DNA of 64,000 nt from Schmidtea nova (GCA_044892505.1 CM097882.1:16678001-16742000); one strand, 5' to 3'; positions 1 to 25,719 are shown, counted from the first letter of the stretch. Made by a program: numbers and translations. Notes: generated by a model not told the origin, from the letters alone.

Positions 1-498
1 TTTATTTGAGGATCACCACAACTTACAATTTATCCAAACTTGTTTTAATCAATATGATGTACACTCGTCAATTCGCACTTTCTTTCTTAATCGGATTTGA
101 TCCTCTCGTTAGGACGGTTACAAAGATATCTTTCTCACTTTGTTTATTGTCTTTTTTTGAATTTCGCAATGTTCTTCCTTCTTTCTCTTGGTAAATTTCA
201 ATAACTTTCTGTCCGTTAATCTTTCGGTTTTTAGGCCCCGTCCTTTAGTTTGCACTGCCTTTTATACATATCGCAAATGGCAATTAAATTTTATCAACAA
301 CCAAAAAGTTACCCAATCTCAGGCTTTATTGGTCCATCAACAAACTATTATGTTTGCGCTCGGGTTTGCCCTGCGCAATCTCCCACCTTTGATCTTACAA
401 GTTTCTACTGCGTTCGCGTTTCCTATTCATTTAAAATCTTTGATATATTTATAATTTTTTGCACTTTTATTTATTTCGATATTTCTTTGCTTTTACTA

Positions 499-1779
499 CA
501 GGGTTATTCATAATTATATGCAAAATTATTATTATTTATATTCAAAATTATTATAATTATATGCAAAATTATTCAAAGTTATATTCACAAATATTAAAAA
601 TTATATGCAAAATTATTACAATTTATATTCACAAATATTACAAATTATATGCAAAAAATCACAAGATAAAATATAAAAAGATACAATGATAATTTTGTTT
701 GTTTTTTTATTCAGATATATATATATATATAATGGTTGTTTTTATTATTCTTACATATAATTAAATTATGTTCTACTCTATGGATGACCAACAAGAACCT
801 CATAACGATGAAAACAATGATGACACTCGACGAAAAAGAACTATTATAACACAAAAGACGTTGTGAAATATAAATAATATGATGTTAAATGGCAAAACTG
901 CTGCTGAAATTGCGTTAAATCTGGACTTATCGAAGAGAACAGTTTATGAAAAGCTGAGTGATTTCATGAATGATAATGAAGATCTGAGTTCATTATTGCA
1001 CCGACCAGGGCCAAAACCAACGGAGATCACAGAAAAAGAAGTGGCAATAGCTGAAGCAGTTCAAAATGACCCAAGTTTGACGCAGAAAGGAATGGTCAAC
1101 ATTTTGGAGGGCAGAGTCATGGTTATAAGCCAACCAACTATTTCTCGAACTTTAAGAAAACTTGAACTTACTAGGAAAGGATAGTCGACAGAAAGAATTC
1201 TAGTCCAGTAATTAATACTAGGAAAGATTTTGCCATTAGGTATCGGCTCAAATCTGATAGTAATTTAATCTATCTTGACGAAACGGGATTGATTCTACCC
1301 TCAACAAGAAACTATGGGTATAGCCCGAAAAATACACCGGCGAGAGTGACATTGCCTACATCGAGAGGGAGGAATGTTTCGACATTGGCAATCATTTCTA
1401 ATACCGAGACTTTACACTGGAAATCTATACAAGGACCTTATAATTCGGCACTATTAGTCGAATTTCTAACAGAATATTTAACGAAACAAATTTTTAGGAA
1501 AAATATTATTGTTTTGATGGACAATGTGAGGTTCCATAAAACGGATATCGTAAGCAACTTTTTTTCGGAAAATAGCATTTTGTTAGATTTTTTACCACCC
1601 AGAGTTGAACTCTATTGAGGAGGTTTTCGGCACAAAATGAAAGCAAGATTTTATGAAAAATGACCAAAGGCAGTATGTGGAAGATGTTTTTATCGATATG
1701 AATTCAAATATTAACTTTGGTGAATTTTATGCGAACATGCGCGCTTACTTGGTGAAGGCGTTTAATGGTATACCGTTTT
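499..1779 (+). mobile_element. Tc1/IS630-family DNA transposon, 5' part (3' part resumes at 16958 after a 15.2-kb insertion)
   Basis: TA|CAGGGTTATTCATAATT start at 497-515; subterminal repeat block ~504-605 reappears reverse-complemented at ~17080-17182; encloses a DDE transposase remnant. Confidence 0.75.
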
Positions 1780-1782
1780 AGT
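780..1782 (+). pseudogene. DD34E Tc1/IS630-type transposase pseudogene
   Basis: HTH region (AAEIALNLDLSKRTVY; ISQPTISRTLRKL), LIYLDETG, IVLMDNVRFHK and a degenerate LPP..ELN.IEEVF; in-frame stops and frameshifts; ends ...KAFNGIPF*. Confidence 0.85.
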
Positions 1783-2376
1783 AGATAGTTATGAGGAGCA
1801 TGACTCATCGAAATTACGTCATCATTACGTAATATTTAATGACCCCCCCGATTTTTTTTGATGGCGTAATCGATGACGTAATTTCAAATTCAAATTTTAA
1901 ATTTAAATTTCCAAAGGTCAAATAAGGTCAAACCTTCAAACAATGGTATCATTCGAAAGGTCTTGGAGAGGTCTATCCAATGGTCATACCCTCGAAGGTT
2001 TATGGAGGGTCATTGACCTTCAAAGGGTCAAAAACCTTCAACTTTTTTCAAACCTTATAATATACATATCAAACAAAAGGTAATTGAGAGGTAAGTATGA
2101 TGGTCATACTTTCAAAGGTGTATGGAGTGTCCTGAACCTTGAAAGGGTCAAAAACCTTCAACCTTTTTTAATTCTTATAATATGTACATCAAACAAAAGG
2201 TAATTGAAGGGTGAGTATAATGGTCATACTATCTACTAACTAACTAATTTTTTGTACAGAGATAACTTGTGTGTGTGTTTAAGAAAAATTACTGTACTCA
2301 TTGAACGCGCGTTTCACGCGCGTTCTTCTTCCTTGTTGTATAAGACAAATCACAGTACGCATTGAACGCGCGTTCT
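1780..2376 (+). repeat. Left terminal region of the palindromic element (TIR-like)
   Basis: Reverse complement of 16339-16951 with few differences; clusters of TGACGT/TTACGT, TGACTCA and AAGGTCAA motifs; internal ~120-bp duplication. Confidence 0.85.
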
Positions 2377-2589
2377 NNNNNNNNNNNNNNNNNNNNNNNN
2401 NNNNNNNNNNNNNNNNNNNNNNNNNNNNNNNNNNNNNNNNNNNNNNNNNNNNNNNNNNNNNNNNNNNNNNNNNNNNNNNNNNNNNNNNNNNNNNNNNNNN
2501 NNNNNNNNNNNNNNNNNNNNNNNNNNNNNNNNNNNNNNNNNNNNNNNNNNNNNNNNNNNNNNNNNNNNNNNNNNNNNNNNNNNNNNNNC

Positions 2590-4365
2590 TCAACACAAAA
2601 TTCTTTCACTTCAAACATAAAGAAAATTAAGAATTCCAAAGACTTCACAATTCTTCCATCAGATAAAACAAATCGACTAATTGCTCTTGACACAGAACAA
2701 TACAATACTCTATTTGAAGAACATCTCTCGAACTATGAACCGATAAACAAAATAATCTTACCTGCATCGACTCAGATTTTATACAATAAGAAACTTTCAA
2801 CACTTGCAAATAAACAAATTAACCTTCAAATCAAAGATTTACTTTTAAAATGCAACTGCAGTGAGCCTTTACCTAGTAATATGACTATGTTACCTAAAGA
2901 TCACAAAAGTCCTTTAAAAGGTAGACCTCTTGTATCTGCAGTTGACACTCCTTCCACAACACTTTCTAAAGTTCTTTCAGAAATTCTAAAAACACTTTTG
3001 CCTTTGGTTCCTTCTCATCTTAAAAACACAACTGAATTCGTCTCCGAAATTACAAATACGTCTCTTCCGTTAAACTCAGGACAACAGTACTTCTGGGGAT
3101 CTCTTGACGTTTCCAATCTTTACGGATCTATTCCTCTTCACGGAGAGAATAACATTTTCGATATCGCAGCTTCTTTCTTTGAAACTCATAAAGCCAATAC
3201 TGACCTCGCAGACTTAACTAAACAAGACTTTATAGAACTTCTAAAATTAGCAATAAATTCAGATACTGTCATAATTAAAGAAAAACCATTTAAACAAATT
3301 CATGGATTAGCCATGGGTAATAACCTTTCTCCCATCTTAGCCATCTTCTACATGAACTTTATAGAATCTAAGATCATATCTTTTTTTGGGGACAAAATAC
3401 TTTTCTGGAAACGATACATCGACGACATCTTCATAGTCTCCACAATCCCTCTCAATCAAATCCTATCACACGCAAATTCTACTAACACCAACATACAATT
3501 TACTTTTGAAACACCGAACACAGAAGGTAAAATACCGTTTTTAGATACCATGGTAAGTTTCACAAAAGGCCAAGATACACTAAATGCAAACACCGAGCTA
3601 TATTCTAAAGGTTTACATAGCGGTCATATCCTCCCATGGAAAAGCCACGTTCCACTTCAACGCAAAATCGCATTACTAATAGGAGAAAGAAAAAGAGCCA
3701 TAAGAAACTGTTCAGACGCAAACAAAATACAAGAAACATTAGAAAACTTCAAAATACGATTCCTCCAAAATGGATACCCTGAAGACTTTGTAAAGAAACA
3801 CTTCCTTAACGAACCATACCACAATAAACGCAACAATAGAAAACGCCAGAAACACAATAACAATAACAAACACACAACATATCTAAGATTACCTTTCCTA
3901 AATGACACTACAGCCAACAAAATCACCAACATTTTTAATCAAACAGATTTGCCTATCCACATCCGTCCAACGTTCATAACCTCCGCACCGTTAAAATCAC
4001 AACTCCGAAAGCCACCAATTTCCAACATCTCCAAACATAAATGTCTTTGTCGTTCCACAACCCGATGCTTTTGCTTTTCCAAAAATATAGTATATAAACT
4101 TTCTTGTCAAAAATGTGACGCTACTTACATAGGAGAAACACATAGAACTTTTCGCACCCGACTTAATGAACATACTAAAATCAAAACCAGTAATTATTAC
4201 GAACACTGGGAAAAAGTACATAAAACAACTCCATCTATAGAAGAAACAAAATGCCAGATCCTACAAGAGGGATTCAAAAATTCATTACAAAGATTAGCTT
4301 CCGAGACTTTTTTCATAAAAAAATACAAACCGTCCATCAACATTCAATTCGCACAAAAAAATTAA
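2590..4365 (+). CDS. Penelope-like element polyprotein (reverse transcriptase + GIY-YIG endonuclease); 5' end masked or truncated
   Basis: Open for ~590 codons; RT motifs SDKTNR, LDVSNLYGSIP, GLAMGNNLSP, RYIDDIF; endonuclease NIVYKLSCQKCDATYIGETHRTFRTRLNEH. Confidence 0.93.
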   Translation, partial: STQNSFTSNIKKIKNSKDFTILPSDKTNRLIALDTEQYNTLFEEHLSNYEPINKIILPASTQILYNKKLSTLANKQINLQIKDLLLKCNCSEPLPSNMTMLPKDHKSPLKGRPLVSAVDTPSTTLSKVLSEILKTLLPLVPSHLKNTTEFVSEITNTSLPLNSGQQYFWGSLDVSNLYGSIPLHGENNIFDIAASFFETHKANTDLADLTKQDFIELLKLAINSDTVIIKEKPFKQIHGLAMGNNLSPILAIFYMNFIESKIISFFGDKILFWKRYIDDIFIVSTIPLNQILSHANSTNTNIQFTFETPNTEGKIPFLDTMVSFTKGQDTLNANTELYSKGLHSGHILPWKSHVPLQRKIALLIGERKRAIRNCSDANKIQETLENFKIRFLQNGYPEDFVKKHFLNEPYHNKRNNRKRQKHNNNNKHTTYLRLPFLNDTTANKITNIFNQTDLPIHIRPTFITSAPLKSQLRKPPISNISKHKCLCRSTTRCFCFSKNIVYKLSCQKCDATYIGETHRTFRTRLNEHTKIKTSNYYEHWEKVHKTTPSIEETKCQILQEGFKNSLQRLASETFFIKKYKPSINIQFAQKN

Positions 4366-4458
4366 AATAAAATAAATTTTTTCATCCAATAAAATCATTA
4401 TAAAATATTAAAAAAATAATTAAGGCTACTATTTAGGATTAAGTAAATATAACGATAG

Positions 4459-4501
4459 AAATACACACTTGATAAAGGCTGTGCCGAAATATTGTGTTAT
4501 T
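4459..4501 (+). ncRNA. Minimal type I hammerhead ribozyme, U3-A8 variant, in the PLE 3' region
   Basis: ACAC-TTGATAA-A-GGC(TGT)GCC-GAAA-TA-TT-GTGT: stem I ACAC/GTGT, compensated U3-A8 core, stem II, GAAA, palindromic ATAT stem III; 94 bp after the PLE stop codon. Confidence 0.72.
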
Positions 4502-6739
4502 GTTTATAAAAAAAAAATTTTGATCTATAGTCATTATGAGAATTATTGATAATAATAATAAAAAAAGATCAAANNNNNNNNNNNNNNNNNNNNNNNNNNN
4601 NNNNNNNNNNNNNNNNNNNNNNNNNNNNNNNNNNNNNNNNNNNNNNNNNNNNNNNNNNNNNNNNNNNNNNNNNNNNNNNNNNNNNNNNNNNNNNNNNNNN
4701 NNNNNNNNNNNNNNNNNNNNNNNNNNNNNNNNNNNNNNNNNNNNNNNNNNNNNNNNNNNNNNNNNNNNNNNNNNNNNNNNNNNNNNNNNTTTTAATAATT
4801 AATTTTTATTAATTTATTTTTATTAATTTTTATTAATTTATATTAATTATTAATTTTAATTAATTTATTTTTATTTATTTTTATTAATTTTTGTAAAGGA
4901 TTTTTACTCTGGTTATTTTGAATAGGAATTTCTACTCCGAGATTTTCTAGAGCAAAAAAGGGACTCTGGGGTTTTTGTACAGGAATTTTTGATCTGGATT
5001 TTTGTATAAGACTTTTAGTCCTATTATTTTGTATAGGATTTTCAACTCCGAGATTTTCTCGGGCAAAAAGGGACTCTGGTAATTTGAATATGATTTTTGA
5101 TCTTGATTTTGATTTTGAAATAATATTTTGGTCGAGGAAAATTAAAAATTGGTCAGAATCAAATAATTTTTATACCAATCTACTGAGAATCGAATGACGA
5201 ACAAAAAAGGTTCAAAAAGTAAAAACATGAAAATTTTGACTTTTCCGACCCAATTTTTACACGTAAAAAGGGTCAACTCGGGGAAATTCAAAAAAATTAA
5301 AAAGTTGTCAGAATTCAATAATTTTTATACCAATCTACTGAGAATTGAAAGGCAAACAATAATGGTCAAAAAATTAAAATCATGAAAAAATCAAAATTTT
5401 ATACGTAAAATTACAGTCTCAGTAAAAAAGGGTAAAATACATAAAAACGTGGAAATATTTAAAATAAAAATTTTTAAACTAAATAATTAAATCTAAATAA
5501 ATTTATGATAATTAAATAAAAAAGTAAATAAATTCTATACGAATTTCAAAACTCAATAAATAATTCACTCATTATTTTGTATTTAATTTATCAAGTAAAA
5601 TGGTACATTAAATAAAAAAGTAAATAAATTCTATACGAATTTCAAAACTCAGTAAATAATTCACTCATTATTTTGTATTGAATTTATCAAGTAAAATGAT
5701 ACATTAAATAAAAGCATGGAAATAATAAGTAAATTAAACTTAGAATTTAAAAATAATTTGTACTGGATTTATGAAAAATATCAAAGTAAATAAATTAAAG
5801 ATAGAATTTTAAAAATAATTATGAATTTAATGATAAATAGAAATATAAGTAAATTAAGAATAAAAAAGTAAATTAAGAAAGACGTGAGTTTTAATGTCAT
5901 AATTTAAAAAAGAATTGCTTTTAAAGGAACTTTTTAAGGTAATATTTGAAAAATGTGAGAATAATTAATTATTTTTTAAAGTAAAATTTATTAACAATAA
6001 GGTCAATGTAGAATTTTTTAGCAATAAAATCAATGAAAATTTTTTTAATTAATATTTTTCATAAGTAAAATTTTTTAACTAATAAATACAAATCTAATTG
6101 TTTTTTTTTCAATATGATGTTTTTTAAGGAAATGATCAAATGTAGTAAATAAAACACATGTAAATATTGAATTTATTTAGAATAAAAATAGTTATTAAAC
6201 AAGATTTTTTATAATTTTGTATACTAAGTTAAAAAATATCAATTAATGACATAAATTTTTAAAAATAAACGTAATAATTNNNNNNNNNNNNNNNNNNNNN
6301 NNNNNNNNNNNNNNNNNNNNNNNNNNNNNNNNNNNNNNNNNNNNNNNNNNNNNNNNNNNNNNNNNNNNNNNNNNNNNNNNNNNNNNNNNNNNNNNNNNNN
6401 NNNNNNNNNNNNNNNNNNNNNNNNNNNNNNNNNNNNNNNNNNNNNNNNNNNNNNNNNNNNNNNNNNNNNNCTAAGTACCAGCAATAAACCGATCAACTAA
6501 CTAATAATCTCATTACACACACAAATAAACCACTGACTAGTAACTGATCAAATGCCAACTGACTCTATCCACAAATCAACAATCGATTAGTTACTTACAA
6601 GTTACCAACTGACTCTATATATTAACCAACTAGGAAATTTTTCCATGTGTCAATCACTTCCTATTGCCTATATATCAAATATTCCAATCCCCTTAGTTAA
6701 AAATAGTACAATTCCTTACTTACTAACTTTATCTATACT

Positions 6740-7636
6740 AACCAACTAACTAACTATACATACTAACCCAAAACCACTTCCTTACTAACCAACTAGTTCT
6801 ATACATCAACCAACTAACTCTTCACATTAACCAAGTAACTAACTAACTAACTAACCAGCAACCAATACATTACTAACCAACTAGTTCTATACATTAACCA
6901 ACTAACTTTATTCACATTAACCAAGTAACTAACTAACTGACTAACTATACATACTAACCAGCAACCACTTCCTTACTAACCAACTAGTTCTATACATCAA
7001 CCAACTAACTCTTCACATTAACCAACCAACTAACTAACTAACCAGCAACCACTTCCTTACTAACCAACTAGTTCTATACATCAACCAACTAACTCTTCAC
7101 ATTAACCAACCAACTAACTAACTAACCAAAAACCACTTCCTTACTAACCAACTAGTTCTATACATCAACCAACTAACTCTTCACATTAACCAAGTAACTA
7201 ACTAACTAACCAGCAACCAATACATTACTAACCAACTAGTTCTATACATTAACCAACTTACTTTATTCACATTAACCAAGTAACTAAATAACTGACTAAC
7301 TATACATACTAACCAGCAACCACTTCCTTACTAACCAACTAGTTCTATACATCAACCAACTAACTCTTCACATTAACCAACCAACTAACTAACTAACCAG
7401 CAACCACTTCCTTACTAACCAACTAGTTCTATACATCAACCAACTAACTCTTCACATTAACCAAGTAACTAACTAACTAACTAACCAGCAATCAATTCAT
7501 TACTAACCAACTAGTTCTATACATCAACCAACTAACTTTTCACATTAACCAAGTAACTAACTAACTAACTAACCAGCAATCAATTCATTACTAACCAACT
7601 AGTTCTATGCATCAACCAACTAACTCTTCACATTAA
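6740..7636 (+). repeat. A/C-rich minisatellite, ~10 units of ~84-105 bp built on TAAC/CAAC microrepeats
   Basis: AACTAGTTCTATACATCAACCAACTAACTCTTCACATTAACC recurs regularly; mirrored at ~13100-13995. Confidence 0.9.
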
Positions 7637-8170
7637 CTAGATATGATATTTAAAACTAACTGATTCTAAATATCGTGTAATAAAATTAAATTTATTACTT
7701 TGAATAATAGAATTAATCTTTAGTTGATTATCAGTTTTCAAAAAGGTATACTAATATCTACGTACTTAAAATAAAATTTTTAAAGTTATTAAAATTTTGA
7801 ATATATTTAAAATGCAAATGACTTTTAATTCAAAGCTCTTTTGAAATCATTGTTCATCTATTTCTTCACTTGATAACTAACATGTATAATTAATTTAAAA
7901 ATCATTATAAAAACTATGTTACCTAGGTAAACATATTAAAAGGATAAGTAAGCAACTAATGAAATATTTTTTGATACTTCTTATTACATGTCCAATTTAA
8001 TTCTTCACTCCGATAATTTAAATGATTAAATAAATAAATATTCAATTATTTCTAAAAATAATAAAAATTAATTCAAAATTTCAATACAAATATTTATTTA
8101 TTAAACATTTTTATTATCAAACATGTGTATTTTATCAGGTTTCACATAAACTGCAATCATGAAAATATAA

Positions 8171-8757
8171 TTTGAATCTTTTACAGGTAAAAACCATCAC
8201 AAAAGAGGTTCTGCTACCAAAGGTTATGTTAGAAAGGTTCTGCTACGTGATAAATCTAATGAAAATGTATCGATAATGGTATATAAGTGAATATACAATA
8301 TGAATCTTTTACAGGTAAAAACCATCACAAAAGAGGTTCTGCTACCAAAGGTTATGTTAGAAAGGTTCTGCTACGTGATAAATCTAATGAAAATGTATCG
8401 ATAATGGTATATAAGTGAATATACAATATGAATCTTTTACAGGTAAAAACCATCACAAAAGAGGTTCTGCTACCAAAGGTTCTGTTAGAAAGGTTCTGCT
8501 ACGTGATAAATCTAATGAAAATGTATCGATAATGGTATATAAGTGAATATACAATATGAATCTTTTACAGGTAAAAACCATCACAAAAGAGGTTCTGCTA
8601 CCAAAGGTTCTGTTAGAAAGGTTCTGCTACGTGATAAATCTAATGAAAATGTATCGATAATGGTATATAAGTGAATATACAATATGAATCTTTTACAGGT
8701 AAAAACCATCACAAAAGAGGTTCTGCTACCAAAGGTTCTGTTAGAAAGGTTCTGATA
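8171..8757 (+). repeat. 128-bp tandem repeat (5 unit starts: 8187, 8315, 8443, 8571, 8699)
   Basis: Exact 128-bp period of TTTTACAG|GTAAAAACCATCACAAAAGAGGTTCTGCTACC... Confidence 0.95.
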
Positions 8758-9270
8758 CTGAATATAATTGTTAATAATAAATTTTACCAAAATATTTATT
8801 GATTTTTAATTTTAATTATTTTCAGTGAATTATTAATATTAATATTTTTATTATTACCACGTAATAATTTTGTAACATTAAATCTGTTTCGAATGTTCTT
8901 TATGAAATTTATAAAAGTTGATATAATAAGAAAAACTAATCAATTTATTCACAAAGGGCAAATTATGTATGTGATGCAGCTACCTGTTTGGGTATAGTAA
9001 CTTTTCATTGAATTGCGAGAGTTTTTATCATAATTCGATGCATTACAATATTTTTTGATATAATCTGTCTATTAAAAGATTTTGCATAAATAATCATTTA
9101 TCATATATTTTGCATAAATAATTTATTATCATATTAAAATAAAGTGTGTATCTGCACACAAAAATATCAATAAATAAAAAATTAATAAAAATGTTAAACG
9201 AAATCTGATTGGTCAATTTAAATTATGAAAACATATATAAATTGATTAAAAATTACAGATTTCATTAAAA

Positions 9271-9822
9271 ATGTATCAACTTAAAAGTAGGTTTAATTAA
9301 TTTTAAATGATTATTTTTAATATTTTTAATATTTTATTCTAGAATCTTCGAACAAAAATATGTTGAAACAAGAAGTAATGAAAATTATTCTTGAAGAAAA
9401 TTCTATTTCGGCATCAAATTTGGTTAGGAATCCTGCAGTTCAATTTCTACAATACTCGATGGAATATTTAAAATTTCCAATCATTTATTCATTTAAAGTA
9501 TATATTTTTATTTAATTAAAATAAATTTCTAATAATTATTTTATAGGAACCTGTTACATTGAAACAATGCATGTATAATCTTCAAGTGGGGAAAATTGGA
9601 GATATTGATAGACGAAATATTTCAGAAATTTTGTTAGCAATCAACAAAGAAATACAATTTAATGAAGCTTTTACGTATATGAATTGCATTAAAGATTGTA
9701 ATTTGAAAAATCCCGATGAAAATTCAATATATCAAATTAAAATAATGATTCAAGGCTTCAAAGAATCTAATGATGTTGTCAAACCTGTTTGGAAAATTAT
9801 AGAAACAAATATATGTGAATAA
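9271..9822 (+). CDS. Three-exon orphan gene, 148 aa (exons 9271-9286, 9343-9497, 9547-9822), left-arm copy
   Basis: GT-AG introns of 56 and 49 nt with compatible phases give an uninterrupted 447-nt CDS (MYQLKKSSNKNMLKQEVMKIILEE...KPVWKIIETNICE*); inverted CCAAT box (CTGATTGGTCAA) ~60 bp upstream. An AG at 9257-9258 means a further upstream exon is possible. Confidence 0.75.
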
Positions 9823-10249
9823 AATTTATTTATCAAATCTTATCTTTTCATTTCAATTTATTTTATTTTATTTTATTTTTTGATTTGGTTAATTTAAATT
9901 TTTAATAACAATTATTTTTTGTGTTAAATTTATTACCAAATATTAAAAATCGAATAGTTTTTTATTAAATAAAAATAATTAATTTTATTATCATAATTAT
10001 TCTAAATTGATTTTGTTTTAATAATTGATTATACGTTTAAAATTAAAATTCAAATTAATTTTCTTTAATATTTCCCGGCAACAATAATTAATTCGGAATT
10101 TGATATATATTCGAATATATATATATATATCAAATTCCGAATTAATTATTGTTGCCGGGAAATATTAAAGAAAATTAATTTGAATTTTAATTTTAAACGT
10201 ATAATCAATTATTAAAACAAAATCAATTTAGAATAATTATGATAATAAA

Positions 10250-10985
10250 ATTAATTATTTTTATTTAATAAAAAACTATTCGATTTTTAATATTTGGTAA
10301 TAAATTTAACACAAAAAATAATTGTTATTAAAAATTTAAATTAACCAAAACAAAAAATAAAATAAAATATTAATTATTTTTATTTTAATAAAAAACTAAT
10401 CGATTTTTAATATTTGGTAATAAATTTAACACAAAAAATAATTGATATTAAAAATTTAAATTAATTATTTTTATTTTAATAAAAAACTATTCGACTTTAA
10501 ATATTTGGTAATAAATTTAACACAAAAAATAATTGTTATTAAAAATTTAAATTAACCAAAACAAAAAATAAAATAAAATATTAATTATTTTTATTTTAAT
10601 AAAAAACTAATCGATTTTTAATATTTGGTAATAAATTTAACACAAAAAATAATTGATATTAAAAATTTAAATTAATTATTTTTATTTTAATAAAAAACTA
10701 TTCGACTTTAAATATTTGGTAATAAATTTAACACAAAAAATAATTGTTATTAAAAATTTAAATTAACCAAAACAAAAAATAAAATAAAATATTAATTATT
10801 TTTATTTTAATAAAAAACTAATCGATTTTTAATATTTGGTAATAAATTTAACACAAAAAATAATTGATATTAAAAATTTAAATTAATTATTTTTATTTTA
10901 ATAAAAAACTATTCGACTTTAAATATTTGGTAATAAATTTAACACAAAAAATAATTGTTATTAAAAATTTAAATTAACCAAATCA
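10250..10985 (+). repeat. AT-rich tandem expansion (~90/120-bp alternating units) present only in the right arm
   Basis: TAATAAAAAACTA(A/T)TCGA...GGTAATAAATTTAACACAAAAAATAATTG repeated ~7 times; single copy at ~9860-9985 in the left arm. Confidence 0.85.
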
Positions 10986-11043
10986 AAAAATAAAATAAAA
11001 TAAAATAAATTGAAATGAAAAGATAAGATTTGATAAATAAATT

Positions 11044-11595
11044 TTATTCACATATATTTGTTTCTATAATTTTCCAAACAGGTTTGACAACATCATTAGA
11101 TTCTTTGAAGCCTTGAATCATTATTTTAATTTGATATATTGAATTTTCATCGGGATTTTTCAAATTACAATCTTTAATGCAATTCATATACGTAAAAGCT
11201 TCATTAAATTGTATTTCTTTGTTGATTGCTAACAAAATTTCTGAAATATTTCGTCTATCAATATCTCCAATTTTCCCCACTTGAAGATTATACATGCATT
11301 GTTTCAATGTAACAGGTTCCTATAAAATAATTATTAGAAATTTATTTTAATTAAATAAAAATATATACTTTAAATGAATAAATGATTGGAAATTTTAAAT
11401 ATTCCATCGAGTATTGTAGAAATTGAACTGCAGGATTCCTAACCAAATTTGATGCCGAAATAGAATTTTCTTCAAGAATAATTTTCATTACTTCTTGTTT
11501 CAACATATTTTTGTTCGAAGATTCTAGAATAAAATATTAAAAATATTAAAAATAATCATTTAAAATTAATTAAACCTACTTTTAAGTTGATACAT
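11044..11595 (-). CDS. Three-exon orphan gene, identical right-arm copy (exons 11595-11580, 11523-11369, 11319-11044)
   Basis: Exact mirror of 9271-9822 (coordinates sum to 20866). Confidence 0.75.
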
Positions 11596-12109
11596 TTTTA
11601 ATGAAATCTGTAATTTTTAATCAATTTATATATGTTTTCATAATTTAAATTGACCAATCAGATTTCGTTTAACATTTTTATTAATTTTTTATTTATTGAT
11701 ATTTTTGTGTGCAGATACACACTTTATTTTAATATGATAATAAATTATTTATGCAAAATATATGATAAATGATTATTTATGCAAAATCTTTTAATAGACA
11801 GATTATATCAAAAAATATTGTAATGCATCGAATTATGATAAAAACTCTCGCAATTCAATGAAAAGTTACTATACCCAAACAGGTAGCTGCATCACATACA
11901 TAATTTGCCCTTTGTGAATAAATTGATTAGTTTTTCTTATTATATCAACTTTTATAAATTTCATAAAGAACATTCGAAACAGATTTAATGTTACAAAATT
12001 ATTACGTGGTAATAATAAAAATATTAATATTAATAATTCACTGAAAATAATTAAAATGAAAAATCAATAAATATTTTGGTAAAATTTATTATTAACAATT
12101 ATATTCAGT

Positions 12110-12570
12110 ATCAGAACCTTTCTAACAGAACCTTTGGTAGCAGAACCTCTTTTGTGATGGTTTTTACCTGTAAAAGATTCATATTGTATATTCACTTATA
12201 TACCATTATCGATACATTTTCATTAGATTTATCACGTAGCAGAACCTTTCTAACAGAACCTTTGGTAGCAGAACCTCTTTTGTGATGGTTTTTACCTGTA
12301 AAAGATTCATATTGTATATTCACTTATATACCATTATCGATACATTTTCATTAGATTTATCACGTAGCAGAACCTTTCTAACAGAACCTTTGGTAGCAGA
12401 ACCTCTTTTTTGATGGTTTTTACCTGTAAAAGATTCATATTGTATATTCACTTATATACCATTATCGATACATTTTCATTAGATTTATCACGTAGCAGAA
12501 CCTTTCTAACATAACCTTTGGTAGCAGAACCTCTTTTGTGATGGTTTTTACCTGTAAAAGATTCAAATTA
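12110..12570 (-). repeat. Mirror 128-bp tandem repeat with one unit fewer
   Basis: Four GGTTTTTACCTG unit boundaries versus five in the left arm. Confidence 0.9.
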
Positions 12571-13099
12571 TATTTTCATGATTGCAGTTTATGTGAAACC
12601 CGATAAAATACACATCTTTGATAATAAAAATGTTTAATAAATAAATATTTGTATTTAAATTTTGAATTAATTTTTATTATTTTTAGAAATAATTGAATAT
12701 TTATTTATTTAATCATTTAAATTATCGGAGTGAAGAATTAAATTGGACATGTAATAAGAAGTATCAAAAAATATTTCATTAGTTGCTTACTTATCCTTTT
12801 AATATGTTTACCTAGGTAACAGAGTTTTTATAATGATTTTTAAATTAATTATACATGTTAGTTATCAAGTGAAGAAATAGATGAACAATGATTTCAATAG
12901 AGCTTTGAATTAAAAGTCATTTGCATTTTAAATATATTCAAAATTTTAATAACTTTAAAAATTTTATTTTAAGTACGTAGATATTAGTATACCTTTTTGA
13001 AAACTGATAATCAACTAAAGATTAATTCTATTATTCAAAGTAATAAATTTAATTTTATTACACGATATTTAGAATCAGTTAGTTTTAAATATCATATCT

Positions 13100-13995
13100 A
13101 GTTAATGTGAAGAGTTAGTTGGTTGATGCATAGAACTAGTTGGTTAGTAATGAATTGATTGCTGGTTAGTTAGTTAGTTAGTTACTTGGTTAATGTGAAA
13201 AGTTAGTTGGTTGATGTATAGAACTAGTTGGTTAGTAATGAATTGATTGCTGGTTAGTTAGTTAGTTAGTTACTTGGTTAATGTGAAGAGTTAGTTGGTT
13301 GATGTATAGAACTAGTTGGTTAGTAAGGAAGTGGTTGCTGGTTAGTTAGTTAGTTGGTTGGTTAATGTGAAGAGTTAGTTGGTTGATGTATAGAACTAGT
13401 TGGTTAGTAAGGAAGTGGTTGCTGGTTAGTATGTATAGTTAGTCAGTTAGTTAGTTACTTGGTTAATGTGAATAAAGTTAGTTGGTTAATGTATAGAACT
13501 AGTTGGTTAGTAATGTATTGGTTGCTGGTTAGTTAGTTAGTTACTTGGTTAATGTGAAGAGTTAGTTGGTTGATGTATAGAACTAGTTGGTTAGTAAGGA
13601 AGTGGTTTTTGGTTAGTTAGTTAGTTGGTTGGTTAATGTGAAGAGTTAGTTGGTTGATGTATAGAACTAGTTGGTTAGTAAGGAAGTGGTTGCTGGTTAG
13701 TTAGTTAGTTGGTTGGTTAATGTGAAGAGTTAGTTGGTTGATGTATAGAACTAGTTGGTTAGTAAGGAAGTGGTTGCTGGTTAGTATGTATAGTTAGTCA
13801 GTTAGTTAGTTACTTGGTTAATGTGAATAAAGTTAGTTGGTTAATGTATAGAACTAGTTGGTTAGTAATGTATTGGTTGCTGGTTAGTTAGTTAGTTAGT
13901 TACTTGGTTAATGTGAAGAGTTAGTTGGTTGATGTATAGAACTAGTTGGTTAGTAAGGAAGTGGTTTTGGGTTAGTATGTATAGTTAGTTAGTTG
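13100..13995 (-). repeat. Mirror copy of the A/C-rich minisatellite
   Basis: Reverse complement of 6740-7636. Confidence 0.9.
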
Positions 13996-16338
13996 GTTAG
14001 TATAGATAAAGTTAGTAAGTAAGGAATTGTACTATTTTTAACTAAGGGGATTGGAATATCTGATATATAGGCAATAGGAAGTGATTGACACATGGAAAAA
14101 TTTCCTAGTTGGTTAATATATAGAGTCAGTTGGTAACTTGTAAGTAACTAATCGATTGTTGATTTGTGGATAGAGTCAGTTGGCATTTGATCAGTTACTA
14201 GTCAGTGGTTTATTTGTGTGTGTAATGAGATTATTAGTTTATTGATCGGTTTATTGCTGGTACTTAGNNNNNNNNNNNNNNNNNNNNNNNNNNNNNNNNN
14301 NNNNNNNNNNNNNNNNNNNNNNNNNNNNNNNNNNNNNNNNNNNNNNNNNNNNNNNNNNNNNNNNNNNNNNNNNNNNNNNNNNNNNNNNNNNNNNNNNNNN
14401 NNNNNNNNNNNNNNNNNNNNNNNNNNNNNNNNNNNNNNNNNNNNNNNNNNNNAATTATTACGTTTATTTTTAAAAATTTATGTCATTAATTGATATTTTT
14501 TAACTTAGTATACAAAATTATAAAAAATCTTGTTTAATAACTATTTTTATTCTAAATAAATTCAATATTTACATGTGTTTTATTTACTACATTTGATCAT
14601 TTCCTTAAAAAACATCATATTGAAAAAAAAAACAATTAGATTTGTATTTATTAGTTAAAAAATTTTACTTATGAAAAATATTAATTAAAAAAATTTTCAT
14701 TGATTTTATTGCTAAAAAATTCTACATTGACCTTATTGTTAATAAATTTTACTTTAAAAAATAATTAATTATTCTCACATTTTTCAAATATTACCTTAAA
14801 AAGTTCCTTTAAAAGCAATTCTTTTTTAAATTATGACATTAAAACTCACGTCTTTCTTAATTTACTTTTTTATTCTTAATTTACTTATATTTCTATTTAT
14901 CATTAAATTCATAATTATTTTTAAAATTCTATCTTTAATTTATTTACTTTGATATTTTTCATAAATCCAGTACAAATTATTTTTAAATTCTAAGTTTAAT
15001 TTACTTATTATTTCCATGCTTTTATTTAATGTATCATTTTACTTGATAAATTCAATACAAAATAATGAGTGAATTATTTACTGAGTTTTGAAATTCGTAT
15101 AGAATTTATTTACTTTTTTATTTAATGTACCATTTTACTTGATAAATTAAATACAAAATAATGAGTGAATTATTTATTGAGTTTTGAAATTCGTATAGAA
15201 TTTATTTACTTTTTTATTTAATTATCATAAATTTATTTAGATTTAATTATTTAGTTTAAAAATTTTTATTTTAAATATTTCCACGTTTTTAAGTATTTTA
15301 CCCTTTTTTACTGAGACTGTAATTTTACGTATAAAATTTTGATTTTTTCATGATTTTAATTTTTTGACCATTATTGTTTGCCTTTCAATTCTCAGTAGAT
15401 TGGTATAAAAATTATTGAATTCTGACAACTTTTTAATTTTTTTGAATTTCCCCGAGTTGACCCTTTTTACGTGTAAAAATTGGGTCGGAAAAGTCAAAAT
15501 TTTCATGTTTTTACTTTTTGAACCTTTTTTGTTCGTCATTCGATTCTCAGTAGATTGGTATAAAAATTATTTGATTCTGACCAATTTTTAATTTTCCTCG
15601 ACCAAAATATTATTTCAAAATCAAAATCAAGATCAAAAATCATATTCAAATTACCAGAGTCCCTTTTTGCCCGAGAAAATCTCGGAGTTGAAAATCCTAT
15701 ACAAAATAATAGGACTAAAAGTCTTATACAAAAATCCAGATCAAAAATTCCTGTACAAAAACCCCAGAGTCCCTTTTTTGCTCTAGAAAATCTCGGAGTA
15801 GAAATCCCTATTCAAAATAACCAGAGTAAAAATCCTTTACAAAAATTAATAAAAATAAATAAAAATAAATTAATTAAAATTAATAATTAATATAAATTAA
15901 TAAAAATTAATAAAAATAAATTAATAAAAATTAATTATTAAAANNNNNNNNNNNNNNNNNNNNNNNNNNNNNNNNNNNNNNNNNNNNNNNNNNNNNNNNN
16001 NNNNNNNNNNNNNNNNNNNNNNNNNNNNNNNNNNNNNNNNNNNNNNNNNNNNNNNNNNNNNNNNNNNNNNNNNNNNNNNNNNNNNNNNNNNNNNNNNNNN
16101 NNNNNNNNNNNNNNNNNNNNNNNNNNNNNNNNNNNNNNNNNNNNNNNNNNNNNNNNNNNNNNNNNNNNNNNNNNNNNNNNNNNNNNNNNNNNNNNNNNNN
16201 NNNNNNNNNNNNNNNNNNNNNNNNNNNNNNNNNNNNNNNNNNNNNNNNNNNNNNNNNNNNNNNNNNNNNNNNNNNNNNNNNNNNNNNNNNNNNNNNNNNN
16301 NNNNNNNNNNNNNNNNNNNNNNNNNNNNNNNNNNNNNN

Positions 16339-16951
16339 AGAACGCGCGTGAAACGCGCGTTCAATGCGTACTGTGATTTGTCTTATACAACAAGGAAGAA
16401 GAACGCGCGTTTCACGCGCGTTCAATGAGTACAGTAATTTTTCTTAAACACACACACAAGTTATCTCTGTACAAAAAATTAGTTAGTTAGTAGATAGTAT
16501 GACCATTATACTCACCCTTCAATTACCTTTTGTTTGATGTACATATTATAAGAATTAAAAAAGGTTGAAGGTTTTTGACCCTTTCAAGGTTCAGGACACT
16601 CCATACACCTTTGAAAGTATGACCATCATACTTACCTCTCAATTACCTTTTGTTTGATATGTATATTATAAGGTTTGAAAAAAGTGGAAGGTTTTTGACC
16701 CTTTGAAGGTCAATGACCCTCCATAAACCTTCGAGGGTATGACCATTGGATAGAACTCTCCAAGACCTTTCGAATGATACCATTGTTTGAAGGTTTGACC
16801 TTATTTGACCTTTGGAAATTTAAATATAAAATTTGAATTTGAAATTACGTCATCGATTACGCCATCAAAAAAATCGGGGGAGGGGGGGTCACGAAATATT
16901 ACGTAATTATGACGTAATTTCGATGAGTCATGCTCCTCATAACTATCAACT
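16339..16951 (-). repeat. Right terminal region of the palindromic element (TIR-like)
   Basis: Mirror of 1780-2376. Confidence 0.85.
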
Positions 16952-16957
16952 CGTTTT

Positions 16958-17182
16958 AAATAAAAAATTGAATTTGCTTGTCGCTATAGTAAATATAAAC
17001 TTTTTCTGTATTGAGTTTTTACACTATACTTCTATAATATATAAATCGTCGTATATATTAAAATCTCATTTAATAACGGTGAATATAATTTTTAATATTT
17101 GTGAATGTAACTTTGAATAATTTTGCATATAATTATAATAATTTTGAATATAAATAATAATAATTTTGCATATAATTATGAA
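16958..17182 (+). mobile_element. 3' end of the interrupted Tc1/IS630 element
   Basis: Removing the insertion and one TSD gives CCG TTT TAA followed by an overlapping AATAAA; the block ends in the inverted copy of the 504-605 subterminal repeats. Confidence 0.7.
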
Positions 17183-18244
17183 CACATTATTTATTTTTAT
17201 TTTTGTGATTTTTATTTTAACCCTAACATTTTTCATTTAAATTTAACCCATTAATAAGATTTATGACAAATTAATTTGACTCGTTAATGAAAATATAAGA
17301 GACAATTTGGTATTTATACAGACAAAGACATCGCAGTTGATGTTCAATTCAAGTGCATGGCTAGGATAGGTTAACAAAGATTATATTGATTGAAATAAGT
17401 AAAAATTAAATAATCATGTTCAATATTTTGACAAATCTATAAAAACAAATTTAAATGATCAGCTCAATCTAATTTTGGATGAAATTAGAAATCTAAATAG
17501 GAGTCTTCAGTCAAATTTGGTAAAACAAAAATCTGCAAATAAATCATCGATAATGAAATTCACATAATTTATTTAGAACTATTTTCTAAGTCTTTATTTC
17601 AATAATGATGAGTCATAGACCTTTTTAACATGGCCACTTTAAACCTCTGCAGAACAAAAACTACGAGTCATACCAAGAAGTATTACGTATCATCTTGTAG
17701 CTTGACTCATCCTTTGTCGAATCAATGACTCGTCATGATAACTAATGTCTTCAAGAATGAGTAGTTCATTTGTGAGCCAAAGAGCACACGTTTTACAACT
17801 ATAATACATTTTATTTGATACTTTTATTTGAGTTTTAAAAATAATAATTAATTAATAAGTAAGAATTTCATTTTAAAATCAAACATACAACAATAATAGT
17901 TTAATATAATTAATTAAAAACCCGCACGGACTTTTACTTAGTTTAACTTACAAATTTATATGACATTCTGTTCAAACAGATCAATTTTGACATTTTTGAA
18001 ATATTTCATTTATAGTTGTAATTTAAGAAATATTCAAACAATTTTCTTGACTTTCAAGAACATTTTATTTTTAGTCTCAATTGATCATTTTCAAATTCAA
18101 TATATCTTTTAGACAATAAATCCGTCTAGAATATAACCAGATTAATTCAATAGTAAAAGCTCGCAATTACACCAAACGGCATAAATTAAGGGCCAGACAG
18201 GCAACAGCTAATGTATCTATAATAATAAATTATTTTACATATAG

Positions 18245-18288
<44 letters not shown>

Positions 18289-18480
18289 ACTGCAGATTAG
18301 GACAAAGAAAAAAAGCACAGTCTTAAATTACGGGTCTATACTATAGAAAATAAGAAAAATAAATTACGTAAAAAACACACTTACACAACACACAAAAAAC
18401 CTATAATGAAAATTACAAACTTATGGACATAATTTAAGTGACAATCTTTAATTAAGGGATTTTCAAATTTTAAAAAAATC

Positions 18481-19007
18481 ATGATTTATGAAGATATTTC
18501 AAAAGTTCGTCTGAATCAAACATGCCAATTATTAGAGAGTATCAAGCAGAAATGTAAATATACAATTATATTAAAAAATTTAATAAAAAATATTTTTAGA
18601 AATGCAGAAAATGAACCTATAATGCCTGAAACGGCCGAAACTGTAGAAAGAAAACATCGAAAAAGTAAAACTAATTTCAATTTTTAATTTTTTACTAAAC
18701 ATTTTATAGATATACAGAACATGACAAGATATTGCTAATAGAAGTAATGAAACGGGTTGAAAATTATGAAGAATTTGGCCGGCAAATTGGTTTTGAACCT
18801 AATATTCTTTGCAATTTATCCACAAAAACAATATCTAGATTTTGAAAAGATAAGCTGATTATAAAATTCATATGGAATTAGTCAAAAGATTTGTGGAGGA
18901 AGAATTAGAAAAGGATCATATTTTCATTTGAAAAATTATTATGATCATATTAAAAGGTTCTTCCCAAAGTCTTTATTCAAAAAGGAAATCTTGGCGACAT
19001 GTAAATA
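18481..19007 (+). pseudogene. Decayed spliced gene with a death-domain-like segment
   Basis: Short AT-rich intron-like spacers separate coding-like blocks; one block reads LLIEVMKRVENYEEFGRQIGFEPNIL, then frameshifted MELVKRFVEEE...; family assignment is by eye only. Confidence 0.35.
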
Positions 19008-23640: not shown

Positions 23641-23664
23641 ATAATTATTATTATTATTTAACCA

Positions 23665-25519: not shown

Positions 25520-25654
25520 TTTTCACCTTTGATCTTTTTTTATTATTATTATCAATAATTCTCATAATGACTATAGATCAAAAAATTTTTTTTATAAACA
25601 TGTTATTGTTTATAAAAAAAAATTTTTGATCTATAGTCATTATGAGAATTATTG

Positions 25655-25660: not shown

Positions 25661-25719
<59 letters not shown>

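What the first reader, a model, noticed from the sequence alone, without database searches (positions are those of the whole stretch)
1774..16957. A 15.2-kb fully palindromic mobile element with Polinton-type ends and a 6-bp TSD
Seen: 1780-16951 is one inverted repeat with no spacer (centre ATATAT-TCGA-ATATAT at ~10112). It begins AGTAGATAG, ends CTATCAACT and is flanked by CGTTTT twice. Removing it restores a Tc1 transposase ending CCG TTT TAA plus AATAAA and rejoins that transposon's two ends, so it inserted as a unit and is not a fold-back read artefact. Established: AG...CT termini with ~6-bp TSDs characterise Polintons/Mavericks (protein-primed polymerase, retroviral-type integrase). Seen: no polymerase, integrase or capsid gene inside. 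Inference: a non-autonomous 'snap-back' Polinton derivative made by fold-back replication at a (TA)n hairpin and mobilised in trans, analogous to hairpin deletion derivatives of protein-primed linear replicons.
Basis: partly seen in the sequence, partly recalled or inferred. Interest (0 to 1): 0.9.

Follow-up and report, generated by a model that had tools for sequence, protein, structure and literature searches.

The report
Giant palindromic transposon inside a Tc1
A 15.2-kb stretch that reads almost the same on both strands sits inside a dead Tc1 transposon and carries the marks of having jumped in as one piece; it has no transposition genes of its own apart from a retroelement (Penelope-like) gene lodged in one arm, and its link to Polinton/Maverick virus-like elements rests only on its first few bases and a 6-bp duplication.

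Summary
1780-16951 (15,172 bp, 1,199 of them N) is one spacerless inverted repeat centred on (AT)4-TCGA-(AT)8 at 10103-10130. It has 23/24-identical ends (AGTAGATAGT... / ...ACTATCAACT) and CGTTTT on both sides. It lies inside a single degenerate Tc1-like element whose own inverted repeats (507-622, 17068-17182) bracket it.

It is not "fully" palindromic. The left arm is 1.5 kb longer. 2377-4789 (N + 1,985 readable bases + N) faces only a 395-N run on the right. Two tandem arrays differ in copy number.

2589-4365 is an open 591-codon Penelope-like reverse transcriptase with a C-terminal GIY-YIG nuclease, most likely a later insertion into the left arm only. No Polinton gene was found: no ORF of 50 aa or more in the readable shared arm sequence has a Pfam hit.

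The Polinton attribution is the best available fit but is unproven. It rests on the 6-bp duplication, 5'-AG...CT-3', and 5/6 and 4/6 matches to the published Maverick (AGT)2 end motif. The architecture is that of a fold-back element taken to completion.

The ends diverge five times more than the interior. That argues against a single snap-back that copied the termini too.

Verdict: a real, unusual non-autonomous element, a new variant of a known kind, with superfamily unresolved.

The parts
1774..1779 (.). Left copy of the 6-bp target-site duplication (CGTTTT)
   Evidence: Read directly from the sequence. It is identical to 16952-16957.
1780..16951 (.). The whole palindromic element: 15,172 bp, of which 1,199 are N
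   Evidence: Collinear inverted arms found by the repeat finder and blastn.
1780..2376 (+). Left terminal domain. Its mirror is 16339-16951. The two are 97.2% identical. The outermost 24 bp match 23/24.
1810..1885 (+). Subterminal inverted repeat (about 21-bp stems rich in ACGTAAT motifs) inside the terminal 105 nt. It is present at both ends.
   Evidence: DNA fold z = -4.8 (left end) and -3.3 (right end), with 0 of 200 shuffles folding as well.
1979..2230 (+). 120-bp subterminal tandem repeat (2.1 copies; mirror at 16496-16746). The terminal module is packed with GGTCA (10x) and AAGGT (14x) motifs.
   Evidence: TRF. Motif density is 17-20 times the window background.
2228..2237 (-). Internal inverted copy of the terminal 10-mer AGTAGATAGT (mirror at 16489-16498, + strand). 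It bounds a 458-bp terminal module.
   Evidence: About 0.02 exact occurrences are expected per arm (my arithmetic), but the motif is low in complexity, so this is suggestive only.
2377..2588 (.). N run (212)
   Evidence: Not filled.
2589..4365 (+). Penelope-like element gene: RT plus C-terminal GIY-YIG nuclease. 591 open codons run out of the N run, with no stop or frameshift in the readable part. The N-terminal ~300 aa of full-length relatives are not visible.
   Evidence: Pfam RVT_1 at 7e-8. Pfam GIY-YIG at 1.6e-6 on the last 129 aa. 51% identity to residues 305-877 of an 877-aa relative. 188 homologues, many carrying PF00078 and/or PF01541.
4366..4573 (+). 3' untranslated region and tail of the Penelope-like element. 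4446-4573 is a repeat that recurs six or more times in the window.
   Evidence: blastn hits at 83-98% identity at about 23.5, 25.6, 32.3, 39.4, 53.1 and 60.4 kb.
4574..4789 (.). N run (216)
4790..6279 (+). Non-coding AT-rich arm segment holding a 96-bp repeat (2.2 copies). Its mirror is 14453-15943, 99.8% identical.
6280..6470 (.). N run (191). Its mirror N run is 14268-14452 (185).
   Evidence: The edges mirror each other to the base.
6739..7637 (+). C-rich satellite with an 84-103-bp unit and a 355-bp higher-order unit. Its mirror is 13101-14001.
   Evidence: GC skew is -0.59 on the left and +0.43 on the right.
8160..8758 (+). 128-bp tandem repeat with 4.7 copies. The mirror at 12108-12578 has 3.7 copies.
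10103..10130 (.). Centre of symmetry: (AT)4-TCGA-(AT)8, with no spacer
   Evidence: The arms 9864-10110 and 10123-10369 are 100% complementary.
10248..11002 (+). 211-bp tandem repeat with 3.6 copies, found only in the right arm. The left arm has one copy.
15944..16338 (.). N run (395). It is the only counterpart of left-arm 2377-4789.
16339..16951 (-). Right terminal domain
16952..16957 (.). Right copy of the target-site duplication (CGTTTT)
504..1779 (+). Left part of the host Tc1-like element. Its terminal inverted repeat is 507-622. The transposase gene (about 781-1779) is interrupted at least three times: two frameshifts and one in-frame stop.
   Evidence: Pfam DDE_3 at 1e-12 and weak HTH hits. 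Repeats. Three-frame reading.
16958..17185 (+). Right part of the same Tc1-like element, with terminal inverted repeat 17068-17182

Best explanation
This is a real, non-autonomous DNA element of fold-back architecture taken to its limit. It has two arms of about 7-8 kb that are mirror images, with no middle domain. The arms are non-coding and full of tandem repeats.

Only the outer ends carry transposition signals: a 24-bp terminal repeat, a subterminal hairpin-forming repeat, and dense arrays of short motifs in a 458-bp terminal module.

Shown: the two ends were inserted together into a Tc1-like element, at the stop codon of its already broken transposase gene, by an enzyme that makes a 6-bp staggered cut.

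Inferred: the enzyme was supplied in trans. By TSD length and end bases it was most likely a Polinton/Maverick-type retroviral-like integrase (about 40%). The main alternative is an undescribed or unrecognised cut-and-paste transposase.

Inferred: the palindrome arose when a break next to the short natural palindrome (AT)n-TCGA-(AT)n let a 3' end fold back and prime copying of the other arm. Equivalently, the terminal repeats were elongated inward by arm-to-arm copying. The older, more diverged ~600-bp terminal repeats were left at the outside.

Inferred: a Penelope-like retrotransposon then inserted into the left arm only, into a repeat tract that is written N in both arms.
For: Palindrome, centre, ends and TSD. 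Host Tc1-like element with its own inverted repeats on both sides.

The arms are independent copies, not a duplicated read. There are 25 substitutions and almost no indels over 5.1 kb, and the tandem-repeat copy numbers differ.

The shared arm sequence shows no coding capacity. The 10 longest of the 11 ORFs of 50 aa or more lack any Pfam hit. The 87-aa ORF has no homologue.

The terminal module is 17-20 times enriched in short motifs and carries a subterminal hairpin.

The end signature matches the published Maverick features: 6-bp TSD and 5'-(AGT)2//(ACT)2-3' or (AG)3//(CT)3 end motifs (PMC8097293; PMC10045372).

[quoted passage not shown] Fold-back priming at short inverted repeats makes large palindromes (PMC7999016).

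For the Penelope-like element being a later insertion in one arm: the left N runs total 212 + 216 = 428 against 395 on the right. The N-run edges fall at matching sequence in both arms. The ORF is open. These elements favour microsatellites and are typically 5'-truncated (PMC8557442).
Against: Only one copy is visible, so there is no family and no second TSD. No autonomous partner was seen. The termini match the Maverick motif at only 5/6 and 4/6 positions.

Published Maverick TIRs span 46-1,447 bp, not 7-8 kb.

1,199 bases are N, so symmetry there is unproven. Whether the Penelope-like gene is in one arm or both is unknown.

The assembly is gap-ridden (18 N runs in 64 kb) and I have no read-level support for the centre.

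The steep rise in divergence at the ends could also reflect conversion that homogenises the interior, or end-specific mutation. It does not by itself date the events.
Confidence: 0.6

Rival explanations
1. The element is a defective 'snap-back' genome of a Polinton/Maverick. It was made in one step during protein-primed strand-displacement replication, when a strand folded back at the (TA)n hairpin. A Polinton integrase then integrated it.
For: 6-bp TSD and AG...CT ends, with AGTAG at the left tip. A spacerless centre on a self-complementary (AT)n-TCGA-(AT)n. A total length of 15.2 kb, inside the 12.7-24.6 kb range of intact vertebrate Mavericks. From my own recollection, not checked here: palindromic defective genomes are known for other protein-primed linear replicons.
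Against: There is no trace of any Polinton gene in 5.3 kb of readable shared arm, so nothing ties the interior to a Polinton. A one-step copy should leave termini and interior equally diverged, yet the ends diverge 1.7-3.6% against 0.33%. The terminal repeat motif is imperfect. No partner element was examined.
Confidence: 0.22
2. A fold-back element of a cut-and-paste superfamily that is not a Polinton. It could be an undescribed lineage or one that makes 6-bp duplications. Its long TIRs grew by elongation until they met.
For: The architecture is that of fold-back elements: a flanking domain, tandem repeats within the TIRs, an inner domain and no coding capacity (PMC4079207). Dense subterminal motif arrays are typical of transposase binding sites. 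An internal inverted copy of the terminal 10-mer bounds a MITE-like 458-bp module.
Against: Every named candidate fails a tested feature. Mutator-type fold-back elements make 8-10-bp TSDs. IS3EU/GingerRoot make 6-bp TSDs but end in TA..TA. Ginger2 ends in TGTNR. Dada lacks TIRs and targets small-RNA genes.
Confidence: 0.3
3. An ordinary element with ~600-bp TIRs inserted. The interior became palindromic afterwards, in place, by arm-to-arm copying or gene conversion spreading inward from the TIRs.
For: Divergence is high in the outer 600 bp and low inside, falling to 0% in the last 125 bp before the centre. The TSD only proves that the ends arrived together.
Against: This requires loss of all unique internal sequence at this one locus. 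There is no remnant of a middle domain. It cannot be told apart from pre-insertion formation using one copy.
Confidence: 0.2
4. The interior symmetry is an assembly artefact. For example, two haplotypes or paralogues were joined head to head at the self-complementary (TA)n. Only the ~600-bp TIRs and the junctions are real.
For: The scaffold is heavily gapped, at about one N run per 3.5 kb. The N-run edges mirror each other at matching sequence. (TA)n is its own reverse complement. Penelope-like insertions are known to break assemblies (PMC8557442).
Against: A gap-free stretch (6471-14267) crosses the centre with 3.6 kb on each side. Four contig pairs lie in exact mirror order and orientation out to a right junction that is contiguous with the Tc1 flank. 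Arm divergence is heterogeneous rather than a uniform heterozygosity level. No other large palindrome occurs in the window.
Confidence: 0.12
5. The palindrome is the inverted-copy structure that Penelope-like elements make when they insert.
For: A Penelope-like gene lies in the left arm. Such elements often carry an inverted 5'-truncated copy, forming inverted repeats (PMC8557442). Small (~230 bp) head-to-head pairs of this element's tail occur five times in the window.
Against: The orientation is wrong. The described structure joins copies at their 5' ends with the 3' ends pointing outward. Here the ORF's 3' end points inward, and the centre lies 5.7 kb beyond the stop codon, in unrelated satellite-rich DNA. 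The termini are not Penelope-like sequence. The gene has no demonstrated partner in the right arm.
Confidence: 0.03

Closest known systems
Polinton/Maverick elements and their non-autonomous derivatives
   Same: A 6-bp target-site duplication. 5'-AG...CT-3' ends, with AGTAG at the left tip resembling the (AGT)2 end motif. Terminal inverted repeats. An overall size of about 15 kb. Presence in an animal genome.
   Different: There is no protein-primed polymerase, integrase, capsid, ATPase or protease gene. The inverted repeats make up the whole element (7-8 kb arms against 46-1,447 bp). The end motif is imperfect. No autonomous partner with the same ends has been seen.
Fold-back transposons (Drosophila FB, Tetris, Galileo and relatives)
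   Same: Very long inverted repeats built from a terminal domain, internal tandem repeats and an inner domain. No coding capacity. Probably mobilised in trans. Association with satellite-like arrays.
   Different: The TSD is 6 bp, not 7-10 bp. There is no middle domain at all. The arms are several times longer than usual. The ends are unrelated to any family I could test.
Large palindromes made by fold-back priming at short inverted repeats (yeast, mammalian cells)
   Same: A spacerless centre on a short self-complementary sequence. Arms that are near-identical copies.
   Different: Those are chromosomal rearrangements with no defined outer ends. This one has transposon ends and a target-site duplication.
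Penelope-like elements with a C-terminal GIY-YIG nuclease (for the nested gene only)
   Same: RT followed by a C-terminal GIY-YIG domain. Apparent 5' truncation. A tail sequence that recurs as head-to-head inverted pairs. Insertion next to low-complexity repeats. Nearest named relatives are in cnidarians and a sponge.
   Different: No hammerhead ribozyme was detected at this copy. Best identity to any database protein is only 51%. It explains one segment of one arm, not the palindrome.

Membership tests
Polinton/Maverick | [quoted passage not shown] | tested here: not met
   The only polymerase is a Penelope-type RT. The 10 longest of the 11 ORFs of 50 aa or more in the readable shared arm give no Pfam hit. 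Sequence under the N runs was not seen.
Polinton/Maverick | Retroviral-like integrase gene | tested here: not met
   No such ORF or Pfam hit.
Polinton/Maverick | Capsid (major and minor), packaging ATPase and protease genes | tested here: not met
   None found.
Polinton/Maverick | 6-bp target-site duplication | tested here: met
   CGTTTT at 1774-1779 and at 16952-16957. The feature is taken from PMC8097293 and PMC10045372.
Polinton/Maverick | Repeated end motif 5'-(AGT)2//(ACT)2-3' or 5'-(AG)3//(CT)3-3' | tested here: inconclusive
   The ends read AGTAGA // TCAACT. AG/CT is met. The match to (AGT)2 is 5/6 on the left and 4/6 on the right. The motif was defined in vertebrates, and the host here is an unidentified AT-rich animal.
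Polinton/Maverick | Terminal inverted repeats of roughly 50-1,500 bp flanking a unique gene-bearing body | tested here: not met
   The inverted repeats are the whole element, with no unique body.
Non-autonomous Polinton derivative | Ends shared with an autonomous Polinton of the same genome | not testable with these tools
Fold-back transposons (Mutator- or P-related) | Long TIRs with internal tandem repeats and no coding capacity | tested here: met
Fold-back transposons (Mutator- or P-related) | TSD of 8-10 bp (Mutator type; Tetris 8-10 bp) | tested here: not met
   The TSD is 6 bp, or 7 at most if one ambiguous A is counted. The feature is taken from PMC4079207.
IS3EU/GingerRoot | 6-bp TSD with TA..TA (occasionally TG..CA) termini | tested here: not met
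   The TSD length fits. The termini are AG..CT.
Ginger2/TDD | TGTNR termini | tested here: not met
Dada | 6-7-bp TSD, no TIRs, insertion into small-RNA genes | tested here: not met
   The TSD length fits. The element has TIRs and sits in a Tc1-like transposase gene. No tRNA lies in 1-20000.
Penelope-like element (nested gene) | Penelope-type RT with a C-terminal GIY-YIG endonuclease in one ORF | tested here: met
   RVT_1 at 7e-8. GIY-YIG at 1.6e-6, above the cut-off. Collinear 51% match to residues 305-877 of a relative.
Penelope-like element (nested gene) | Hammerhead ribozyme motif in the pseudo-LTR | tested here: not met
   No hammerhead hit in 1-20000 at E <= 1. The pseudo-LTR may lie under the N runs.
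Penelope-like element (as an explanation of the whole palindrome) | Inverted 5'-truncated copy abutting the 5' end of a full copy, with 3' ends outward | tested here: not met
   The ORF's 3' end points to the centre, which lies 5.7 kb beyond the stop codon. The feature is taken from PMC8557442.
Tc1/mariner (host element) | DDE transposase between short terminal inverted repeats | tested here: met
   DDE_3 at 1e-12. 116-bp inverted repeats 94.8% identical. The TA duplication and the exact outer ends were not resolved.

The most novel reading that the evidence does not exclude
The element is a chromosomally integrated, palindromic defective genome of a Maverick/Polinton-type virus-like element. 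That would make it a genomic record that such protein-primed replicons shed snap-back molecules which their integrase can still insert. It would also show that a spacerless palindrome of about 15 kb can persist in an animal chromosome.
Probability: 0.2. Interest if true: 0.8.

Novelty: new variant of a known kind. Interest (0 to 1): 0.5.

Why it matters
Long spacerless palindromes are fragile and rarely survive in chromosomes. A 15-kb one with transposon ends and a target-site duplication shows that a mobile element can consist of nothing but two mirror-image arms and still be inserted as a unit.

If the ends prove to be Polinton-type, it would tie the fold-back architecture to a superfamily where it has not been described. 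[quoted passage not shown]

It would also give a sequence-level handle on how these virus-like elements replicate.

There is a practical lesson too. A reading that relies on long ORFs alone can miss a nested retroelement gene when that gene runs out of an assembly gap.

Tried and rejected
- **Hammerhead ribozymes.** I looked for them, as the hallmark of many Penelope-like elements, in 1-20000 and in the whole window. None lies at this element. The tail palindromes give only sub-threshold mir-31 hits, which I take for hairpin mimicry.
- **Pfam on interior ORFs.** I scanned 10 of the 11 interior ORFs of 50 aa or more and found nothing.
- **The 87-aa ORF.** It is present in both arms. It has no homologue in 5.8 billion proteins.
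- **tRNA genes.** None were found.
- **Other copies in the window.** I looked for other copies of the ends and for other large palindromes. There are none.
- **Identifying the organism.** I tried through the neighbouring protocadherin-like gene. The best hit is an unnamed UniParc entry at 87% identity and all others are at 30% or less, so the host stays an unidentified AT-rich animal.
- **Closed or unavailable sources.** Kapitonov and Jurka 2006 is not held, so the Polinton features are cited from later papers.
- **Penelope-made inverted repeat.** Rejected as an explanation of the palindrome on orientation and distance.
- **The 458-bp terminal module as an independent MITE insertion.** Rejected. 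No duplication flanks it, and its inner 10-mer sits in low-complexity (NCTA)n-like sequence.
- **Steps not done by rule.** I did not fill the N runs. I made no consensus of any kind.

Full report
**Setting.** The window is 26% G+C and carries 18 N runs. It comes from an animal. A single-exon protocadherin-like gene lies at 53846-56656 on the minus strand (Pfam Cadherin 1e-51). Its best database match is an unnamed UniParc entry at 87% identity and everything else is at 30% or less. I could not name the organism. It is not human-like.

- Comparing 1-20000 with its own reverse complement gives four collinear arm segments:
  - 1780-2374 with 16951-16352, 97.2%
  - 4790-6279 with 15943-14453, 99.8%
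  - 6471-8639 with 14267-12098, 99.3%
  - 8288-9985 with 12578-10880, 99.5%
- The arms meet without a spacer at TCGA (10111-10114), between (AT)4 and (AT)8.
- The outermost 24 bases are 23/24 identical as inverted repeats and occur nowhere else in the window.
- CGTTTT flanks the element on both sides. With boundaries fixed by the repeat ends, a 6/6 match has a chance of about 4e-4 at this composition.
- A 7-bp duplication is possible only if one ambiguous A is counted, which would make the ends unequal. Six is the better reading.

**The flanks.** They belong to one Tc1-like element. I compared them apart and did not join them.
- The left flank has a DDE_3 domain (1e-12) and weak helix-turn-helix hits.
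- Positions 507-622 and 17182-17068 are inverted repeats at 94.8%.
- The two pieces sum to about 1.5 kb, a normal Tc1 length.
- The insertion lies at the very end of the transposase reading frame.
- That frame is already interrupted at least three times upstream, by two frameshifts and one in-frame stop.
- A fold-back read or amplification chimera would make the two flanks mirror images too. They are not.

**The N runs, tested first.** I did not fill them, and continuity across them cannot be proven.
- All four pairs of edges fall at matching sequence in the two arms. Three are at the mirror-image base: 4790 with 15943, 6279 with 14453, 6471 with 14267. The 2376/16339 pair sits behind an 11-base indel.
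- One pair of runs is 191 against 185 N.
- N runs also follow the end of the same repeat at 4574, 23425 and 60564.
- Whatever produced the runs followed sequence content. So the symmetry probably continues through 6280-6470 and 14268-14452.

- The arms are 8,337 and 6,835 bp, so the centre is at 10112 and not at the arithmetic midpoint.
- The main cause is 2377-4789 on the left (212 N, 1,985 readable bases, 216 N), which faces a single 395-N run on the right.
  - It has a Pfam reverse-transcriptase domain (7e-8).
  - Its last 129 residues have a GIY-YIG nuclease domain above the curated cut-off (1.6e-6).
  - It aligns at 51% identity, end to end, with residues 305-877 of an 877-residue relative.
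  - Many of its 188 homologues carry the same domains, and the named ones come from cnidarians and a sponge.
- This is a canonical endonuclease-bearing Penelope-like element. The readable part has no stop or frameshift. The N-terminal ~300 residues of relatives are not visible, and the 212-N run could hold only about 70 of them. The copy is therefore either 5'-truncated, as is usual for this class (PMC8557442), or the run is underestimated.
- Its tail (4446-4573) recurs at 83-98% identity at about 23.5, 25.6, 32.3, 39.4, 53.1 and 60.4 kb, five times as head-to-head pairs. That is the inverted-copy habit described for these elements.
- The left N runs total 428 against 395 on the right, and the ORF itself is not written N on the left. 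The simplest reading is that the retroelement entered the left arm only, inside a repeat tract present in both arms. I put this at about 65%.
- Other asymmetries: the 128-bp array has 4.7 copies on the left and 3.7 on the right, and the 211-bp array has about 1 and 3.6.

**What the arms are.**
- Outside the retroelement I found no coding capacity. The 10 longest of the 11 stop-to-stop ORFs of 50 aa or more in 4790-10116 gave no Pfam hit.
- The 87-aa ORF found in both arms has no homologue.
- There is no tRNA and no Rfam family.
- The arms are AT-rich and made largely of tandem arrays with units of 96, 84-103, 128 and 211 bp.
- The terminal module (1780-2237) is different in kind:
  - the 24-bp terminal repeat;
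  - a subterminal inverted repeat at 1810-1885 that folds far better than shuffles at both ends;
  - a 120-bp tandem repeat;
  - a density of GGTCA, AAGGT and ACGTAAT motifs 17-20 times the window background;
  - an inverted copy of the terminal 10-mer at its inner edge.
- This looks like an array of protein-binding sites, as in the subterminal regions of many DNA transposons.

**A new point that bears on mechanism.** The arms are not uniformly diverged.

| Segment | Substitutions |
|---|---|
| Outer 141 bp | 3.6% |
| 1921-2376 | 1.1% |
| Three interior segments | 0.13%, 0.59%, 0.24% |
| Last 125 bp before the centre | 0% |

- Ends against interior gives 10/595 versus 15/4,531 (Fisher p = 2.6e-4).
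- The differences are clean substitutions with hardly any indels. That speaks for two real copies rather than sequencing noise.
- One fold-back event that copied a half-element, terminus included, predicts uniform divergence.
- The pattern fits better with older, imperfect terminal repeats and a younger or continually homogenised interior. That means inward elongation of the repeats by arm-to-arm copying, with the last join at the self-complementary (AT)n-TCGA-(AT)n.
- Fold-back priming at short inverted repeats is an established route to large palindromes (PMC7999016). Elongation of TIRs after loss of the transposase gene is the proposed origin of fold-back elements in several superfamilies (PMC4079207).
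- The TSD proves that the ends arrived together. It does not prove that the interior was already palindromic.

**Which family?**
- Membership in the Polinton/Maverick family as such fails. The polymerase, integrase, capsid, ATPase and protease genes were all tested and not found. The inverted repeats are the whole element rather than 46-1,447 bp.
- The claim that it is mobilised like a Polinton fares better.
  - A 6-bp TSD is the Polinton value (PMC10045372).
  - Vertebrate Mavericks carry 5'-(AGT)2//(ACT)2-3' or (AG)3//(CT)3 end motifs (PMC8097293).
  - The ends here read AGTAGA // TCAACT, which is 5/6 and 4/6.
- Other families with 6-bp duplications fail on the ends or the target:
  - IS3EU/GingerRoot ends in TA..TA.
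  - Ginger2 ends in TGTNR.
  - Dada has no TIRs and targets small-RNA genes.
  - Mutator-type fold-back elements make 8-10-bp duplications.
- So Polinton-type ends are the best fit among described families. But the evidence is six bases and one duplication, from one copy. I give it about 40%, with an unrecognised cut-and-paste lineage close behind.

**Artefact.**
- Against: a gap-free stretch (6471-14267) crosses the centre with 3.6 kb on each side. Four contig pairs lie in exact mirror order out to a right junction that is contiguous with the Tc1 flank. No other large palindrome occurs in the window.
- For: the scaffold is heavily gapped, (TA)n is its own complement, and I have no reads.
- I keep this at about 12%.

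**Limits and rules.**
- I left out a scan of the public viral and metagenome collections with the terminal pattern.
- I recalled a few short motifs from memory while reasoning.

**Verdict.** This is a real and unusual element: a spacerless 15-kb fold-back transposon with a 6-bp duplication, carrying a younger Penelope-like insertion in one arm. Its Polinton ancestry is plausible but unproven, and the one-step snap-back origin is weakened by the divergence pattern.

Noticed in passing
window 23426-23641, 25528-25668, 32212-32434, 53076-53251, 60339-60557 (pairs); 39376-39504 (single): The ~115-bp tail of the Penelope-like element recurs as ~230-bp head-to-head palindromes, often abutting N runs. 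These hairpins give sub-threshold Rfam hits to mir-31 (36-45 bits against a gathering score of 51), which I take for mimicry by a perfect hairpin.
   Followed up: partly
window 52678-52747 (-): A sequence with a complete-looking hammerhead core aligns to Hammerhead_HH9 at 24 bits (gathering score 52). It lies about 330 bp from one of the tail palindromes. It may be a retroelement-borne ribozyme of another Penelope-like family.
   Followed up: partly
window 23645-23989 (+), 33815-33958 (+), about 38050-38420: Further 5'-truncated Penelope-like copies that keep only the GIY-YIG end of the gene (weak Pfam GIY-YIG hit at 0.0026 for the first). One follows a tail palindrome directly.
   Followed up: partly
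window 53846-56656 (-): An uninterrupted 925-936-codon protocadherin-like gene (five cadherin domains, a transmembrane stretch). Its only close relative in 5.8 billion proteins is an unnamed 87%-identical entry, so the host lineage is very thinly sampled.
   Followed up: partly
window 2376/16339, 4790/15943, 6279/14453, 6471/14267: All four pairs of N-run edges in the two arms fall at matching sequence: three at the mirror-image base, and the 2376/16339 pair behind an 11-base indel. Paired runs have near-equal lengths (191 against 185; 212 + 216 against 395). The runs therefore track sequence content rather than random read coverage.
   Followed up: partly
window 2228-2237 (-) and 16489-16498 (+): An exact inverted copy of the terminal 10-mer bounds a 458-bp terminal module. 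The module could be a MITE-like unit or a second binding site. The motif sits in low-complexity (NCTA)n-like sequence, so chance is not excluded.
   Followed up: partly
window 2279-2376 and 16339-16425: A G+C-rich ~60-bp repeat with CGCGCG cores stands out in 20-30% G+C surroundings. It runs into the N run at the same point in both arms.
   Followed up: no
window 59381-60247 (+): Two adjacent ORFs (115 and 143 aa) without any Pfam hit, next to a tail palindrome. They are possibly remnants of another mobile element.
   Followed up: partly
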